Shown here: piece after piece, positions 10,312-25,695 of the stretch
How the letters are laid out: each line of letters begins with the position of its first letter
Position numbering within the stretch: position 1 is the first letter of the stretch
Sequence record: ON529851.1
Reading direction: 5' to 3' (one strand)
Length of the DNA: 64,000 bases
Notes under the pieces: model-generated
Databases searched by the model: none
Seen by the model: only the letters and a program-made list of their open reading frames with translations
Told to the model about the DNA's origin: nothing
Program-made: the position numbers and the translations under genes

Positions 10312-10624
10312 GGTTCCTCACGACAATGAGCGCAAGGTCGCGCTCCATGTTGCAGATTTGGTGGGCGATCACGAAGTTCTCTTCGGAATCCGCGCCGCCG
10401 TCGGCGAACCGCACCACATGTTCATAAGTGGCGCCGTACCGACCGTAGTTCGGTCGCCCCTCCGGGTCCTCGTTCAGGCGCCCGCCGCAATGGCAACAGC
10501 GCCAGTTCTGGGCCTCGCTCAGACGATCCTTCAGGTCCCCGAAGAACTTGGTGTGGATGCGGATGCGGCGGCCGAGGTCGTCATGTTCAGGCTCTTCCGG
10601 CCGCCGCCATTTCCGTTTCTTCAC
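10271..10624 (-). CDS. HNH endonuclease
   Basis: CCHCGG..TYEHVVRFADGG..N..AHQICN; GTG start overlapping the SerRS stop. Confidence 0.75.
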   Translation of the reverse strand: MKKRKWRRPEEPEHDDLGRRIRIHTKFFGDLKDRLSEAQNWRCCHCGGRLNEDPEGRPNYGRYGATYEHVVRFADGGADSEENFVIAHQICNMERDLALIVVRNHEAPRQLHQRTRA

Positions 10625-11931
10625 TCCGCCAGACCGACGCTCGGCAGACGCGACCGCAGATAGGGGACCAGGATGGCCGGCATGTCGACGCCGCCGTCGT
10701 CGGTCTGATGGTTCTCGAACAGCGCCGCCAGGGTGCGCCCGACCGCCAGGCCGGAGCCGTTCAGGCTGTGCAGGTAGCCCAGCTTGCCGTCCGCCTGACG
10801 ATAGCGGCCCTTCATGCGCCGGGTCTGGAAGTCGCCGCACCAGGAGATCGAGGCGATCTCGATATAGCGCTGCTGGCTGGGCATCCAGACTTCCAGGTCG
10901 ATGGTCTTGCGGGCGGCGAAGCCCATGTCGCCGGCGGCCAGCAACACCTTGCGGTAGGGCAGGTCGAGGTATTGCAGGACCGTCTCGGCGCAGGCGACCT
11001 TGCGGGCGAACTCGGCCTCGGCCTGTTCAGGCTCGACCAGCGAGACCAATTCCACCTTGTGGAACTGGTGTTGCCGGATCAGGCCGGTGGTGTCGCGGCC
11101 GGCGGCCCCGGCTTCGGCGCGGAAGCAGGGCGTCAGGGCGGTGAAACGCAGCGGCAGGGCCTCGCGCTCGGTGGTCTGCTCGCGCACCAGATTGGTCAGC
11201 GGCACCTCGCCCGTGGGGATCAGCAGGTTGCCGTCCGTCAACTGGAAGAGGTCGTCCTTGAACTTCGGCCATTGCCCGGTGGCGTACATGACGTTCGGCT
11301 TGACGATGAACGGCACCGACTTCTCGACATAGCCGTGTCGGTGCACATGCAGGTCGAGCATGAACTGGCCCAGGGCGCGCTCGACGCTGGCGAAGGCGCC
11401 CGACAGGACGGCGTAGCGCGATCCGCTCAGCCAGCCGGCGACGGCGCTGTCATAGCTGTCCCCGGCCAGGGTGACATGGTCCTGGGGCTCGACGTAGGCG
11501 CGCCGCTGGCCCCATTCACTGAGAACGATGTTGTTCGCTTCTCCGCCCTCAGGGATGTCCTCGGCAGGCAGGTTCGGCAGTTGGTCCACCAGGCCCTCGC
11601 GGGCCTTGTATAGGGCGTCCTCCTGCTTCGCCAACCGCTCCAGTCGCGGCTTGATCTCGACCATGCGGGCGCGCAGGGTCTCTTCCTCGGTCGGCGGCGC
11701 ATCGTCTTCCCGCGCCGCCACCACGGGCCGATCGCCCCGGCGGAGTTCTCCGATCCGGGTCGAGATGGCGTTGCGTTCGGTCTGGAGCGCCTGGAGTTCG
11801 GTGCGGGTCGTCTGGAGGTCGCGGTGCGTCTCGCGGGCGTCGTCGACGATGGCCTTCACCGCCCCGCCGCGTTTGGCGATCGCCGCGACGACCACGTCCG
11901 GCTCATTGTCGATCAGATGGAAATCAAGCAT
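10621..11931 (-). CDS. serS: seryl-tRNA synthetase
   Basis: N-terminal coiled-coil arm, LIPTGEVPLTN, motif 2 FRAEAGAAGRDT.GLIRQHQFHKVE, motif 3 LNGSGLAVGRT. Confidence 0.92.
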   Translation of the reverse strand: MLDFHLIDNEPDVVVAAIAKRGGAVKAIVDDARETHRDLQTTRTELQALQTERNAISTRIGELRRGDRPVVAAREDDAPPTEEETLRARMVEIKPRLERLAKQEDALYKAREGLVDQLPNLPAEDIPEGGEANNIVLSEWGQRRAYVEPQDHVTLAGDSYDSAVAGWLSGSRYAVLSGAFASVERALGQFMLDLHVHRHGYVEKSVPFIVKPNVMYATGQWPKFKDDLFQLTDGNLLIPTGEVPLTNLVREQTTEREALPLRFTALTPCFRAEAGAAGRDTTGLIRQHQFHKVELVSLVEPEQAEAEFARKVACAETVLQYLDLPYRKVLLAAGDMGFAARKTIDLEVWMPSQQRYIEIASISWCGDFQTRRMKGRYRQADGKLGYLHSLNGSGLAVGRTLAALFENHQTDDGGVDMPAILVPYLRSRLPSVGLAE

Positions 11932-22057: not shown

Positions 22058-22084
22058 TGTAAAGGAATGATCTGCGGATGTCAA
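22058..22084 (-). promoter_or_regulatory. promoter with TTCCTTTACA box (copy 8)
   Basis: TTGACA-N11-TTCCTTTACA; spacer nearly identical to copy 1. Confidence 0.75.
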
Positions 22085-22449
22085 TCGGCATTCGCGATCT
22101 CGCACAGCCAGTCGCCGTGACAGCGTAGAGGGGCGCAGGCGCACATCAGGTGGCGGCCTTTGAGTTGGCGCCGCACGAGGGCGAGGAAGGATTCGTCCTG
22201 GCTCTTCTCGGCGATGAACTTGTCAATGACCGTGTCCCGATCCCCGTCCCGGCCGATCAGGTAGCCATTGCCGTAAGGCGTGCCGCGCATGATCGAGGTC
22301 GTCCCCGGCGGCCAGTTATGGCGGTCGAAATCGCGCGCGTTCAGGACCTCGGGCGGACGCGGATGCTTCGCCTTCAGGTGGGTGCGTAGATGCGACTTGC
22401 CCAGGAACCACTCGTCGCAGTCCGGGCACTTGTAGGAGGCGCCGCCCAT
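22081..22449 (-). CDS. DUF4326-like protein with N-terminal C2H2 zinc finger
   Basis: CPDC..F..L..H...KH, then RGTPYGN..G.R..V and LKGRHLMCACAPLRCHGDWL..AN. Confidence 0.7.
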   Translation of the reverse strand: MGGASYKCPDCDEWFLGKSHLRTHLKAKHPRPPEVLNARDFDRHNWPPGTTSIMRGTPYGNGYLIGRDGDRDTVIDKFIAEKSQDESFLALVRRQLKGRHLMCACAPLRCHGDWLCEIANAD

Positions 22450-23777: not shown

Positions 23778-24530
23778 CTAGGCTTCCTGGTTGCTCAGGG
23801 CGACGACCCGATCCAGCCCGATGGCGACCTCGAACACCGTCAGGCTGTTCTTGTGGGTCGTGCCCAGGTAGGGGTCGAACGTCGGGAAGTCGGTGCGGCG
23901 CGAGGTCGACGCGATTTCCTTGAACTCGGTGTGCGTCGGGACGGGGGACCAGAGGCCTTCGATGTCGATGGTCTCGGTGGCGTAGGTCGGCAGTCGGTCC
24001 GACGGGACCTGACGGGTCGGCTGACCGATGATCTGGGCCAGTTCGATCTCCAGGGCGTCCCGCAGCGCCGTGGCGTAGTCGGCGTGGCTGTCGGCGCGGT
24101 AGATGCACTGGAATTCCAGTTGGTAGAAGGCGTTGAACCGCAGTTTGGCGGCCGTGGCGCCGTCGGCGGCCTCGGTGCGGAACGACAGGCCGGCCTGCCA
24201 TACGCATAGCGGCGGCTTGGCGCTGGTCGCCTGGAGCAGGTGCTGGGCGTAGAGATAGGAGCCCGGCGTGGTCTCGGCGCGCAGCGCCCAGGTCTCGGCG
24301 TTCATCTCACGCCGCAACGAAAAGACGTCGTCGGCGTCATAGGCGTCCGAGAAGCCGGCAAGCGGCATGATGACCGGTGCCTCGACCCGTTCCAGGCGCC
24401 AGGACTGGTTGAGGTCCAGAAGAGTGCGCTCGACGCACCCCTTCAGTCGACCGACCGCCTGCTCGCGCTGCTGAATTTCCTTTTCGCTCCAGAATCGCAG
24501 ACCTGCGATCGGATATAGCGCGCGACTCAT
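23778..24530 (-). CDS. minimal class II aaRS catalytic domain, glycyl-tRNA synthetase (alpha2-type)-like, lacking an anticodon-binding domain
   Basis: LRAETTPG, motif 2 QAGLSFRTE..LRFNAFYQLEFQ, YATETIDIE..EIASTSRRTDF, motif 3 VFEVAIGLDR; protein ends a few residues after motif 3. Confidence 0.7.
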   Translation of the reverse strand: MSRALYPIAGLRFWSEKEIQQREQAVGRLKGCVERTLLDLNQSWRLERVEAPVIMPLAGFSDAYDADDVFSLRREMNAETWALRAETTPGSYLYAQHLLQATSAKPPLCVWQAGLSFRTEAADGATAAKLRFNAFYQLEFQCIYRADSHADYATALRDALEIELAQIIGQPTRQVPSDRLPTYATETIDIEGLWSPVPTHTEFKEIASTSRRTDFPTFDPYLGTTHKNSLTVFEVAIGLDRVVALSNQEA

Positions 24531-24560
24531 GGCGGCTCCTATGATTGACGGTGACGGTGA

Positions 24561-24589
24561 CAGTAGCCGTCAGGATAGTTGACTGTCAA
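24561..24589 (-). promoter_or_regulatory. sigma70-like promoter of the GlyRS-like gene
   Basis: TTGACA-17 nt-CTACTG. Confidence 0.55.
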
Positions 24590-24598
24590 GGCGTTCCG

Positions 24599-25144
24599 CT
24601 AGGACCAGCGGGTGATCCGCACGAGTTCTCGCGCCTGGACCGGGTCTCGCCCCGCCTTGATCCAGTCCTTCAGGATGAAGTCGCCGCGCAGCATCGGCCA
24701 CTCCCGCGAGAGCGCCGCCACGGCGCCGTCGTCGAAGGCCGCCTGATCCATGGGGACATAGCTGACCGGCAGATGGAGGGAGCGGGCCAGGTCGATTTCA
24801 CCGCGCACGCCCTCTGATGTCGCCGCGCCCGGCATGTCGATGACGACGATGGCGTCGCAGCGCGCCAGCAGCCGGCGGGAATAGTGCTGCCAGAACTCCC
24901 AGTTGCCGGGGATTTTGTGCTTGCCCAGGATGGCGTGGTTCATGAGCGGCGAGACCGGGAAGGTGTCGCCGGCCGTCAGCATGTCGGCGACGGTCTTGTC
25001 GAAGGCGCTCATGCGTGCGGCGACGATCAGCGGGTCGGGGTCGCTGTAGGGCGCCGCGACATAGACCAGGGAGGCGCTGGGCGACGGCCGGGCGAAGAAA
25101 GGATCGGCGATCTCTTCGGACGTGGGGTGTTGAATGTCGGTCAT
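24599..25144 (-). CDS. DUF1937 / nucleoside deoxyribosyltransferase-like fold protein
   Basis: VYVAAPYS..SPLMNH..W..LLARCDAIVV..SEGVRGEI.LA...PV. Confidence 0.65.
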   Translation of the reverse strand: MTDIQHPTSEEIADPFFARPSPSASLVYVAAPYSDPDPLIVAARMSAFDKTVADMLTAGDTFPVSPLMNHAILGKHKIPGNWEFWQHYSRRLLARCDAIVVIDMPGAATSEGVRGEIDLARSLHLPVSYVPMDQAAFDDGAVAALSREWPMLRGDFILKDWIKAGRDPVQARELVRITRWS

Positions 25145-25695
25145 GCGTCTTCCTCGTTTTCGGGCCACACGATCTCGTCGCGCATGACCTGGTCGAACTC
25201 GTCCCAGGCGGCGGCCGGCGTGGCGTGCAGGGTGGGCGAGCAGTCCCCGCCGGCGTGGACGCGGTAGCCGCCGTCTTCCGCCAGCACGGCCCAGGAACGC
25301 ATGTTCATCGCCGGCATCGGCCGGGAGCGGTCGACCAGGCCCGAGTGCACGACCCCGTCGGGGTTGAGGACCGGATCGTAGTAGTCCCCGGCGATGATCG
25401 CACGGATACGATCTTCAGGTTTCAGCGGCTCGCCCCGATCCAGCCGACGCAGGACCGCCGTATCGTACTGCGGTTGCGAGAGCGGCGGCAGGGGAACTTC
25501 CGAGATGGCGCCGATCCGCTCTACCCGCGCCTTACCGACCGGCCGATCCAGGAGCGTCGTCGCGCAAAAGTCGTCCGCCAGCACCTCGGCGCGATAGGCG
25601 GCGGCGTCGGCGCAGTCGATCTCCACGATGTATTCGGTGGTGACGCGGACCCTGGCCTTGAAAGACCGAGGTCTGTCGAGAATGTCGTCATACAT
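25141..25695 (-). CDS. hypothetical protein
   Basis: 184 aa; coupled downstream. Confidence 0.6.
   Translation of the reverse strand: MYDDILDRPRSFKARVRVTTEYIVEIDCADAAAYRAEVLADDFCATTLLDRPVGKARVERIGAISEVPLPPLSQPQYDTAVLRRLDRGEPLKPEDRIRAIIAGDYYDPVLNPDGVVHSGLVDRSRPMPAMNMRSWAVLAEDGGYRVHAGGDCSPTLHATPAAAWDEFDQVMRDEIVWPENEEDA

What the first reader, a model, noticed from the sequence alone, without database searches (positions are those of the whole stretch)
23778..24589. Minimal GlyRS-like enzyme with only the catalytic core and its own promoter
Seen: a 250-aa ORF with class II aaRS motif 2 (SFRTE..LRFNAFYQLEFQ), motif 3 (EVAIGLDR) and residues resembling alpha2-type GlyRS (LRAET, ETIDIE, EIAS..RTDF). 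It ends just after motif 3. Established: alpha2-type GlyRS has a C-terminal anticodon-binding domain, most alphaproteobacteria use the unrelated alpha2beta2 GlyRS, and stand-alone aaRS cores (EpmA/PoxA, amino acid:carrier-protein ligases) aminoacylate proteins or make dinucleoside polyphosphates. Inference: not a host-derived housekeeping copy. It may charge damaged or anticodon-cleaved tRNA, glycylate a protein, or make ApnN signals.
Basis: partly seen in the sequence, partly recalled or inferred. Interest (0 to 1): 0.72.

Follow-up and report, generated by a model that had tools for sequence, protein, structure and literature searches.

The report
Stand-alone glycine-type synthetase core in phages
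This giant Brevundimonas phage carries an intact 250-residue enzyme that is only the catalytic core of a glycine-tRNA synthetase. It belongs to a large, apparently undescribed family found mostly in huge phages, usually beside tRNA and RNA-repair genes, and what it attaches glycine to is still unknown.

Summary
The ORF is real: window 23778-24530 (-), 250 aa, gene MARCHEWKA_04130 of the 348-kb phage vB_BpoS-Marchewka. It is a complete class II synthetase core that ends 9 residues after motif 3.

Sequence profiles and the predicted fold both place it nearest the alpha2-type GlyRS. The three glutamates and the Ala/Ser that form the GlyRS glycine pocket, and the ATP-binding arginines, are invariant or nearly so (at least 75 of 78) in diverse relatives.

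It is not a fragment. Hundreds of relatives are all about 240 aa, and the phage genome encodes no anticodon-binding domain. dN/dS against a sister phage is 0.18.

It is not host-derived, because Caulobacter, of the host's order, uses the unrelated GlyQ/GlyS enzyme.

The family lives mostly in phages of 200-640 kb, with a few chromosomal copies in alphaproteobacteria. In 25 of 79 viral loci a same-strand tRNA gene lies within 1 kb. Recurrent neighbours are CysRS, a ThrRS-like gene, PTH2, RNA ligase and kinase-phosphatase genes. One clade places the gene between an amber-suppressor tRNA and a TAG-gated PTH2 gene.

Best reading: a glycine-activating enzyme that charges tRNA without reading the anticodon. 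The acceptor is inferred, not shown. The "own promoter" is unsupported.

The scan also flagged this family in two other windows.

The parts
23778..24530 (-). CDS of 250 aa (MARCHEWKA_04130): stand-alone class II synthetase core of GlyRS type
   Evidence: ORF list; annotated as hypothetical protein; Pfam, NCBIfam and PDB similarity; AF2 model with pLDDT 87.6; fold searches
24363..24377 (-). Motif 1 region, residues P52-P56 (P56 conserved in 72 of 78)
   Evidence: Family alignments; the long helix 16-40 and strand that precede it in the model are typical of the class II dimer interface
24267..24281 (-). R84-A-E86-T-T: the GlyRS 'RPET' element; E86 aligns with human GlyRS Glu-245, a ligand of the glycine amino group
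   Evidence: HMM alignment coordinates; invariant in 78 of 78; pocket residues taken from PMC4938167
24108..24185 (-). Motif 2, residues S116-Q141: R118/E120 (ATP), F135, Q137, E139 (= human Glu-296), and a family-specific DGATA loop
   Evidence: two loop subtypes in the family
23808..23831 (-). Motif 3, residues E234-R241: E234 (= human Glu-522), A236 (= Ser/Ala-524), G238, R241 (ATP gamma-phosphate arginine)
   Evidence: structural alignment range model 1-249 = 2pme 81-537; PMC4938167
24531..24598 (-). 68-bp upstream gap with AGGAG (24536-24540) and a TTGACA hexamer (24584-24589); promoter not established

Best explanation
The gene encodes a catalytically competent, probably dimeric, minimal class II synthetase of the alpha2-GlyRS type. 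It binds ATP and glycine and forms glycyl-adenylate. This step is inferred from an intact GlyRS active site that is conserved throughout the family.

It most likely then transfers glycine to the 3' end of tRNA, recognising only the acceptor end because it has no anticodon-binding domain. That would make it an anticodon-blind GlyRS. This second step rests on gene context and analogy only.

In Marchewka the likely substrates are the phage's own tRNA-Gly(UCC) and tRNA-Gly(GCC), or the host's tRNA-Gly. The enzyme would be one part of the phage's translation toolkit, which also includes 23 tRNAs, a full-length SerRS, YqeY and PTH2.
For: 1. Fold and nearest relatives are alpha2 GlyRS.
2. The motif 2 and 3 arginines are near-invariant (77 and 75 of 78). 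The three glutamates that bind the glycine amino group in alpha2 GlyRS (human E245/E296/E522 = E86/E139/E234) are invariant in 78 of 78 relatives at 33-57% identity, and the position of Ser/Ala-524 is A236 in 76 and Ser in 2.
3. Purifying selection: dN/dS is 0.18 against phage Papperlapapp.
4. The architecture is stable at about 240 aa: 647 word-indexed hits and 768 cluster representatives.
5. tRNA linkage: 38 of 79 viral loci have tRNA genes within 10 kb and 25 within 1 kb, where the nearest tRNA is always on the same strand. tRNA-Gly(CCC) ends 19 nt upstream of the gene in L042 and L048. The background for positions 3-10 kb away in the same loci is 15%.
6. Neighbours in different clades are CysRS, a ThrRS-like gene, PTH2, Rnl1-type RNA ligase and a kinase-phosphatase.
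7. Marchewka encodes two tRNA-Gly with the bacterial identity set G1-C72, C2-G71, G3-C70 and U73.
8. Precedents exist for stand-alone class II cores that charge tRNA without reading the anticodon. The 275-aa M. alvus PylRS is among the fold hits. Natural GlyRS 'urzymes' are described in PMC11602164.
Against: No biochemical data exist. The enzyme lacks the insertion domains as well as the anticodon-binding domain of alpha2 GlyRS, which I recall from the literature help hold tRNA. I also recall that the alpha subunit of bacterial GlyRS alone activates glycine but cannot charge tRNA.

In Marchewka and the Caulobacter phages the gene is not next to tRNA genes. No conserved partner gene was found. 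The protein is acidic, with a family median pI of 5.5. The tRNA adjacency is only about twofold over the local background, and many loci are phylogenetically related. The structure-prediction test with tRNA could not be run.
Confidence: 0.45

Rival explanations
1. It activates glycine but passes it to something other than tRNA, such as a protein side chain or N-terminus, a carrier-protein phosphopantetheine, or a small molecule or nucleotide. EpmA, amino acid:carrier-protein ligases and AsnA work this way.
For: Most characterised stand-alone class II cores have non-tRNA acceptors. Bll0957 (3mey, Z=19.2), HisZ (18.1), AsnA (14.7) and GenX (14.2) all share the fold. Chromosomal copies in Devosia, Phenylobacterium and Caulobacter are monocistronic among ordinary metabolic genes. 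Many viral neighbours are NAD-salvage or NUDIX genes rather than translation genes.
Against: No carrier protein or other partner is conserved next to it. The family has no invariant cysteine, so it lacks the zinc site I recall from the methanogen-SerRS-type aa:CP ligases. The strongly conserved motif 2 loop, and the placement inside tRNA arrays and beside other synthetases and PTH2, fit tRNA better.
Confidence: 0.25
2. It is the dedicated charging enzyme of unusual phage tRNAs, such as amber suppressors. It would form a natural anticodon-independent pair that switches on TAG-interrupted genes.
For: In eight related loci the order is tRNA(CUA), then the mini-GlyRS, then PTH2 with an in-frame TAG at codon 8. 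In the distant locus L045 the same three elements lie within 2.5 kb. Borges et al. (bioRxiv 10.1101/2021.08.26.457843) note that synthetases for phage suppressor tRNAs are rarely found. The motif 2 loop of the suppressor clade differs from its sister loci.
Against: Marchewka has no suppressor tRNA among its 23 tRNAs. Its PTH2 has no internal stop. Eight of the nine suppressors carry G73 rather than the U73 of the tRNA-Gly in these loci, and their stems vary. The association rests on one clade plus one independent locus. The amino-acid pocket is identical in loci with and without a suppressor.
Confidence: 0.07
3. It makes dinucleoside polyphosphates (Ap4A or ApnN) as a signal or RNA cap donor, which I recall as a known side activity of alpha2 GlyRS.
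For: The ATP-binding residues are intact. NUDIX hydrolases lie within about 3.5 kb in both Marchewka and Devosia.
Against: As I recall, Ap4A synthesis by GlyRS does not need glycine. Yet all three glycine-binding glutamates are invariant (78 of 78) and the Ser/Ala-524 position is kept, which points to selection for glycine binding. NUDIX genes are common in jumbo phages, so the proximity is weak evidence.
Confidence: 0.07
4. It is non-catalytic: a regulatory subunit, a tRNA or toxin decoy, or a polymerase accessory protein like the GlyRS-like POLG2.
For: HisZ and POLG2 show that this fold can lose catalysis (Z=18.1 and 17.8).
Against: Every catalytic residue is invariant or nearly so across the family, unlike what I recall for HisZ and POLG2.
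Confidence: 0.04
5. It is a truncated or split remnant of a full-length GlyRS. The HNH endonuclease gene immediately downstream might have interrupted it.
For: An HNH endonuclease gene follows within about 45 nt.
Against: The length is constant at about 240 aa in hundreds of relatives with different neighbours. No HGTP_anticodon domain exists anywhere in the genome. The ORFs downstream of the HNH gene have no synthetase-related Pfam hit. Selection is purifying.
Confidence: 0.01

Closest known systems
Alpha2-type (dimeric) glycyl-tRNA synthetase, e.g. M. tuberculosis 8t5n, N. equitans 5z5e, human 2pme
   Same: Class II core with motifs 1-3. It is the nearest sequence and fold relative. It shares the three-glutamate glycine pocket and the GlyRS signatures RxET, SFRxE, FxQxE, (K/R)LxxY, TxDIE and RTDF.
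   Different: No anticodon-binding domain and no insertion domains. It is about half the length. It scores 37.5 bits against the 312-bit NCBIfam cut-off. It occurs mostly in phages.
Delta-N pyrrolysyl-tRNA synthetase (M. alvus PylRS, 6jp2)
   Same: A stand-alone class II core of about 275 aa. I recall that it charges its tRNA without touching the anticodon. It is among the top fold hits.
   Different: The amino-acid pocket and sequence family differ (profile E of about 0.1-0.2). Its tRNA partner is known; here it is not.
Amino acid:carrier-protein ligases (Bll0957, 3mey)
   Same: Stand-alone class II cores of about 300 aa from alphaproteobacteria. Some activate glycine (table in PMC9437257). 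Fold Z=19.2.
   Different: They derive from methanogen-type SerRS, which I recall has a zinc site. They were not detected by the family profile at E<=1. Here there is no invariant cysteine and no adjacent carrier protein.
EpmA/PoxA/GenX (3a5y), HisZ, AsnA
   Same: Class II cores without an anticodon-binding domain that serve non-translational roles.
   Different: They are more distant in fold (Z 14.2-18.1), belong to other subclasses and have different pockets. As I recall, HisZ has lost its catalytic residues; this family has kept them.
GlyRS urzymes (GlyCA, PMC11602164)
   Same: Very small glycine-specific class II fragments reported to be functional.
   Different: Those derive from the unrelated alpha subunit of bacterial alpha2beta2 GlyRS and come from a single database ORF. 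This is a large natural family of the alpha2 type.

Membership tests
Class II aminoacyl-tRNA synthetase catalytic-core superfamily | Antiparallel beta-sheet core carrying motifs 1, 2 and 3 with the two ATP-binding arginines | tested here: met
   AF2 model with pLDDT 87.6. Hundreds of class II hits. R118 is kept in 77 and R241 in 75 of 78 relatives; P56 in 72 of 78.
Alpha2-type GlyRS (NCBIfam PRK04173 / TIGR00389) | Glycine pocket of three glutamates plus Ser/Ala (human E245, E296, E522, S524) | tested here: met
   E86, E139 and E234 are invariant; A236 is Ala in 76 and Ser in 2. The correspondence comes from HMM and structural alignment ranges and PMC4938167.
Alpha2-type GlyRS (NCBIfam PRK04173 / TIGR00389) | Score above the curated equivalog cut-off | tested here: not met
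   37.5 bits against 312, and 21.5 against 243.
Alpha2-type GlyRS (NCBIfam PRK04173 / TIGR00389) | C-terminal HGTP_anticodon domain | tested here: not met
   The protein ends 9 residues after motif 3. PF03129 is absent from all six frames of the phage genome.
Alpha2-type GlyRS (NCBIfam PRK04173 / TIGR00389) | Glycylation of tRNA-Gly | not testable with these tools
   Needs an aminoacylation assay.
Alpha2beta2 GlyRS alpha subunit (GlyQ, TIGR00388) | Match to the glyQ model | tested here: not met
   No match in the phage genome. The model is found in Caulobacter and E. coli controls.
Amino acid:carrier-protein ligase (Bll0957 type) | SerRS-derived core with a zinc site, and an adjacent carrier-protein gene | tested here: not met
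   Not hit by the family profile at E<=1. No invariant cysteine. No conserved neighbour.
EpmA/PoxA (LysRS paralogue) | Class IIb core related to LysRS | tested here: not met
   GenX has Z=14.2 against 22.3 for GlyRS. There is no sequence hit.

The most novel reading that the evidence does not exclude
This family could be a natural anticodon-blind glycyl-tRNA synthetase of huge phages. In some lineages it would be the missing charging enzyme for phage amber-suppressor tRNAs, so that tRNA(CUA) plus the mini-GlyRS form a self-contained pair that inserts glycine at TAG and thereby gates genes such as the TAG-interrupted PTH2. In phages without a suppressor, such as Marchewka, it would keep tRNA-Gly charged independently of the host GlyQS. 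One possible use is together with PTH2 against host toxins that I recall acetylating Gly-tRNA-Gly.
Probability: 0.12. Interest if true: 0.85.

Novelty: new variant of a known kind. Interest (0 to 1): 0.62.

Why it matters
If active on tRNA, this would be among the smallest natural class II synthetases, at about 240 aa. It would be a widespread phage example of charging without anticodon recognition. That bears on three topics:
- how jumbo phages keep translation running or rewire it;
- the open question of who charges phage suppressor tRNAs;
- minimal-synthetase ('urzyme') ideas and new orthogonal synthetase/tRNA pairs.

If the acceptor is not tRNA, it would define a new glycine-transfer chemistry in phage-host conflict. 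Either way, a family of hundreds of clusters, named inconsistently in databases, gets a testable assignment.

Tried and rejected
- **Complex prediction.** A job with the L048 orthologue dimer plus its adjacent tRNA-Gly(CCC) was counted but not folded. This is no evidence either way.
- **Whole genome.** It was not available as a file, so I tiled the GenBank record instead.
- **PHROGs.** No family matched.
- **Rfam and ARAGORN on the window.** No RNA genes were found.
- **Conserved neighbours.** BLAST clustering found no universal partner in 79 viral or 21 cellular loci.
- **TAG recoding.** A crude test in suppressor-bearing loci was uninformative, because standard-code ORF coverage is already about 0.9.
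- **Homologous adjacent tRNAs.** I considered that the adjacent tRNA-Arg(UCU/CCU) and tRNA(CUA) genes are one tRNA with a drifting anticodon. I rejected this: most of the Arg tRNAs have A at the position aligned with U in the suppressors, which I take to be the A20 identity element of tRNA-Arg as I recall it.
- **RNA ligase in Marchewka.** None was found, but the control did not ring either, so this is uninformative.
- **YqeY as a trans-acting tRNA-binding partner.** Stand-alone YqeY is present in Marchewka and in 17 of 25 huge-phage genomes that carry the gene. I had no base rate for phages without the gene, so this stays a lead only.
- **Literature.** Searches found no description of the family.

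Full report
**What the window is**

The window is identical to bases 186001-250000 of Brevundimonas phage vB_BpoS-Marchewka (ON529851.1). This is a 348,421-bp phage of the Dolichocephalovirinae that infects B. pondensis. The finding is gene MARCHEWKA_04130, annotated as a hypothetical protein. Sister phages annotate the orthologue as 'aminoacyl-tRNA synthetase'.

The ORF at 23778-24530 (-) encodes 250 aa. It has an AGGAG ribosome-binding site 5 nt before the ATG. The N-terminus (MS.ALY...LRFW) is conserved across the family, so the start codon is right.

Single-sequence searches give weak but consistent class II hits:
- Pfam tRNA-synt_2b at E=0.004, below the cut-off.
- NCBIfam GlyRS PRK04173 at E=1.2e-9, scoring 37.5 bits against a 312-bit cut-off.
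- PDB GlyRS 8t5n at E=0.003.

A profile of 31 family members raises the PDB GlyRS hit to E=1.8e-14; the best SerRS hit is 4e-7.

An AlphaFold2 model (pLDDT 87.6, pTM 0.87) is a complete class II core. Foldseek ranks mycobacterial GlyRS first at 3e-13. VIA-align run without a Foldseek pre-filter gives these Z-scores:

| Structure | Z |
|---|---|
| N. equitans GlyRS (237 residues aligned) | 22.3 |
| Human GlyRS | 20.4 |
| ProRS | 19.5 |
| aa:CP ligase Bll0957 | 19.2 |
| HisZ | 18.1 |
| POLG2 | 17.8 |
| PylRS | 17.2 |
| AsnA | 14.7 |
| GenX/EpmA | 14.2 |

The 'own promoter' is the weak part. The 68-bp upstream gap has a TTGACA hexamer. No sigma-70 consensus promoter was found, and the extended motif is not recurrent in the window. 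A similar hexamer lies upstream of the Caulobacter-phage orthologues.

**Not a fragment, and not from the host**

- tblastn finds orthologues of about 240 aa in 20 of 50,697 phage records. All are phages of 304-636 kb: Brevundimonas, Caulobacter CcrBL9/CcrSC/Bertelyvirus, Sinorhizobium Phosso, Xanthomonas XbC2 and two uncultured huge phages.
- The word-indexed protein search finds 647 relatives. All but one fragment of the 120 listed are 230-261 aa.
- The exhaustive profile search finds 768 cluster representatives at E<=1e-3, of which 108 are at E<=1e-30. The best 150 are all at most 352 aa. Of seven longer ones scanned, none shows an anticodon-binding domain; those of 306-352 aa match the profile in two stretches, consistent with an unannotated N-terminal insertion.
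- No HGTP_anticodon domain is encoded in any frame of the Marchewka genome.
- The only other class II core in the genome is a full-length SerRS at window 10621-11931.
- The downstream gene is an HNH endonuclease, and the ORFs beyond it have no synthetase-related domain.
- dN/dS against phage Papperlapapp is 0.18.
- The GlyQ model of the alpha2beta2 enzyme is found over its cut-off in Caulobacter vibrioides, a control genome of the host's order, and is absent from the phage. So this alpha2-like core is not a host copy.

**The active site**

In 78 family members at 33-57% identity, these residues are invariant or nearly so: R84, E86, T87, T88, Y92, S116, R118, E120, R131, F135, Q137, E139, Q141, Y183, T187, D189, E205, S208, S210, R212, D214, E234, A236, G238, D240 and R241.

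Valencia-Sanchez et al. (PMC4938167) state that alpha2 GlyRS binds the glycine amino group with three glutamates (human Glu-245, Glu-296 and Glu-522). They add that a Ser or Ala at position 524 helps exclude alanine. The HMM alignment ranges (profile 81-141 = 2pme 240-298, with a two-residue loop insertion) and the structural alignment range (model 1-249 = 2pme 81-537) give this correspondence:
- E86 = Glu-245
- E139 = Glu-296
- E234 = Glu-522
- A236 = position 524

I infer that the enzyme binds ATP and glycine and makes glycyl-adenylate. This is the best-supported step, and I put it at about 0.8.

**Where the family lives, and next to what**

A scan of IMG/VR returned 79 loci, mostly on contigs of 100-600 kb. 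ESM Atlas clusters nearest the protein are 86-100% viral.

A scan of 185,579 species genomes found 21 loci. Nearly all are in alphaproteobacteria: Devosia, Phenylobacterium, Caulobacter, Reyranella and Pseudaminobacter. In Devosia nitrariae the gene sits as a lone gene among ordinary chromosomal genes. No neighbour is conserved across either the viral or the cellular set, so there is no obligate adjacent partner.

Even so, the viral neighbourhoods are rich in translation and RNA-repair functions:
- tRNA genes occur within 10 kb in 38 of 79 loci and within 1 kb in 25 of 79. The nearest tRNA is on the same strand in all 25 of those. Positions 3-10 kb away in the same loci are within 1 kb of a tRNA 15% of the time.
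- tRNA-Gly(CCC) ends 19 nt upstream of the gene in L042 and L048.
- Full-length CysRS is a neighbour in 15 loci, Rnl1-type RNA ligase in 13 (including the Caulobacter phages), and a kinase-plus-metallophosphatase protein in 9.
- A ThrRS-like gene sits next to the gene in a 607-kb phage.
- PTH2 and NAD-salvage genes also recur.

Marchewka itself encodes 23 tRNAs, including Gly(UCC) and Gly(GCC) with G1-C72, C2-G71, G3-C70 and U73. It also encodes SerRS, a stand-alone YqeY and PTH2. None of these is adjacent to the gene.

**The suppressor lead**

I found that arrangement in eight related loci: L057, L059, L067-L070, L073 and L075.

In these loci a lone tRNA(CUA) lies 62-1887 nt upstream on the same strand, preceded by CysRS. 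It is followed 1.5-3 kb later by a PTH2 gene whose only usable start is separated from the domain by an in-frame TAG at codon 8.

The distant locus L045 has the same three elements within 2.5 kb, with the TAG at codon 3. This agrees with scan note s1-156040.

Several points limit this lead:
- Eight of the nine suppressors carry G73 and their stems vary, so they lack the U73 seen in the tRNA-Gly of these loci.
- Marchewka has no suppressor.
- The amino-acid pocket does not differ between loci with and without a suppressor.
- The motif 2 loop does differ (EI[IV]QP against EQ[DE]Q[PV] in sister loci), but that is a single clade.

I therefore treat this as a lead for the family, not as an explanation for this gene.

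**Mechanism and rivals**

| Reading | Confidence |
|---|---|
| Glycine activation followed by anticodon-independent transfer to tRNA | 0.45 |
| Glycine activation with a non-tRNA acceptor | 0.25 |
| Dedicated suppressor-tRNA synthetase, for this phage | 0.07 |
| ApnN synthase | 0.07 |
| Non-catalytic protein | 0.04 |
| Fragment of a full-length GlyRS | 0.01 |

- **tRNA transfer (best).** The transfer step rests on context and on precedents: M. alvus PylRS and GlyRS urzymes (PMC11602164).
- **Non-tRNA acceptor.** This fits the behaviour of most known stand-alone cores and the lone chromosomal copies. It has no partner gene and no zinc-site cysteines.
- **ApnN synthase.** The strictly conserved glycine pocket argues against this.

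**Prior knowledge**

I found no paper describing this family. The jumbo-phage survey of Iyer et al. has no passage on it among those matching synthetase terms. Borges et al. remark that synthetases for phage suppressor tRNAs are rarely found. Databases name family members inconsistently as glycyl-, seryl- or phenylalanyl-tRNA synthetase, or as hypothetical.

**Verdict**

This is a real, intact gene under purifying selection. It is a new variant of a known kind: a class II synthetase paralogue without an anticodon-binding domain. It belongs to a large, mostly phage-borne family that appears uncharacterised. Its function beyond glycine activation is inferred only.

Noticed in passing
L067:9863-12619 (also L057, L059, L068, L069, L070, L073, L075; L045:10001-12514): A conserved module in huge phages. 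CysRS and a lone amber-suppressor tRNA(CUA) precede the mini-GlyRS. A PTH2 gene follows, with a conserved in-frame TAG at codon 8 (codon 3 in L045) and no alternative start after it.
   Followed up: partly
L097:19321-20064 (+): A second stand-alone class II core of 247 aa in the same 498-kb phage. It is SerRS-like (TAETPL, FSPCFRREAG) but lacks the N-terminal coiled-coil arm. BFVD and ESM Atlas list further phage-only class II cores of 185-220 aa, for example in Escherichia phage phAPEC8. Minimal synthetase cores may therefore be a general feature of large phages.
   Followed up: no
L034:8084-10759: In a 607-kb phage, a 488-aa ThrRS-like gene without the editing domain lies immediately upstream. 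A 145-aa ORF separates it from the mini-GlyRS.
   Followed up: no
L115/L133 (Devosia nitrariae BSNS01000007.1), L116, L121, L125, L127: Chromosomal, monocistronic copies of the family (39-51% identity) in cultured alphaproteobacteria. Their surroundings are ordinary genes with no visible phage genes, so they look like domesticated copies.
   Followed up: partly
window 24599-25168 (-) and 22081-22449 (-): The upstream neighbour is a DUF1937/DUF4406-type protein, a family I recall as resembling nucleoside 2-deoxyribosyltransferases. Two genes beyond the downstream HNH gene lies a C2H2 zinc finger fused to DUF4326. Neither function is known.
   Followed up: no
window 10621-11931 (-): A full-length seryl-tRNA synthetase gene lies 12 kb from the mini-GlyRS. 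The phage also has three tRNA-Ser genes elsewhere in the genome.
   Followed up: no
ON529851.1 250752-251141 (+), about 750 nt beyond the window end (L005): A stand-alone YqeY (GatB-C-like domain, which I recall as tRNA-binding). YqeY is also present in 17 of 25 huge-phage genomes that carry the mini-GlyRS, and lies 2.5 kb from it in L002-L004. It is a possible trans-acting tRNA-binding helper, but no base rate was available.
   Followed up: partly
P0140, P0147, P0160, P0169, P0184: Family members of 306-352 aa that match the profile in two stretches, consistent with an unannotated insertion of roughly 70-90 aa. I recall this as roughly the position of insertion 1 in alpha2 GlyRS.
   Followed up: no
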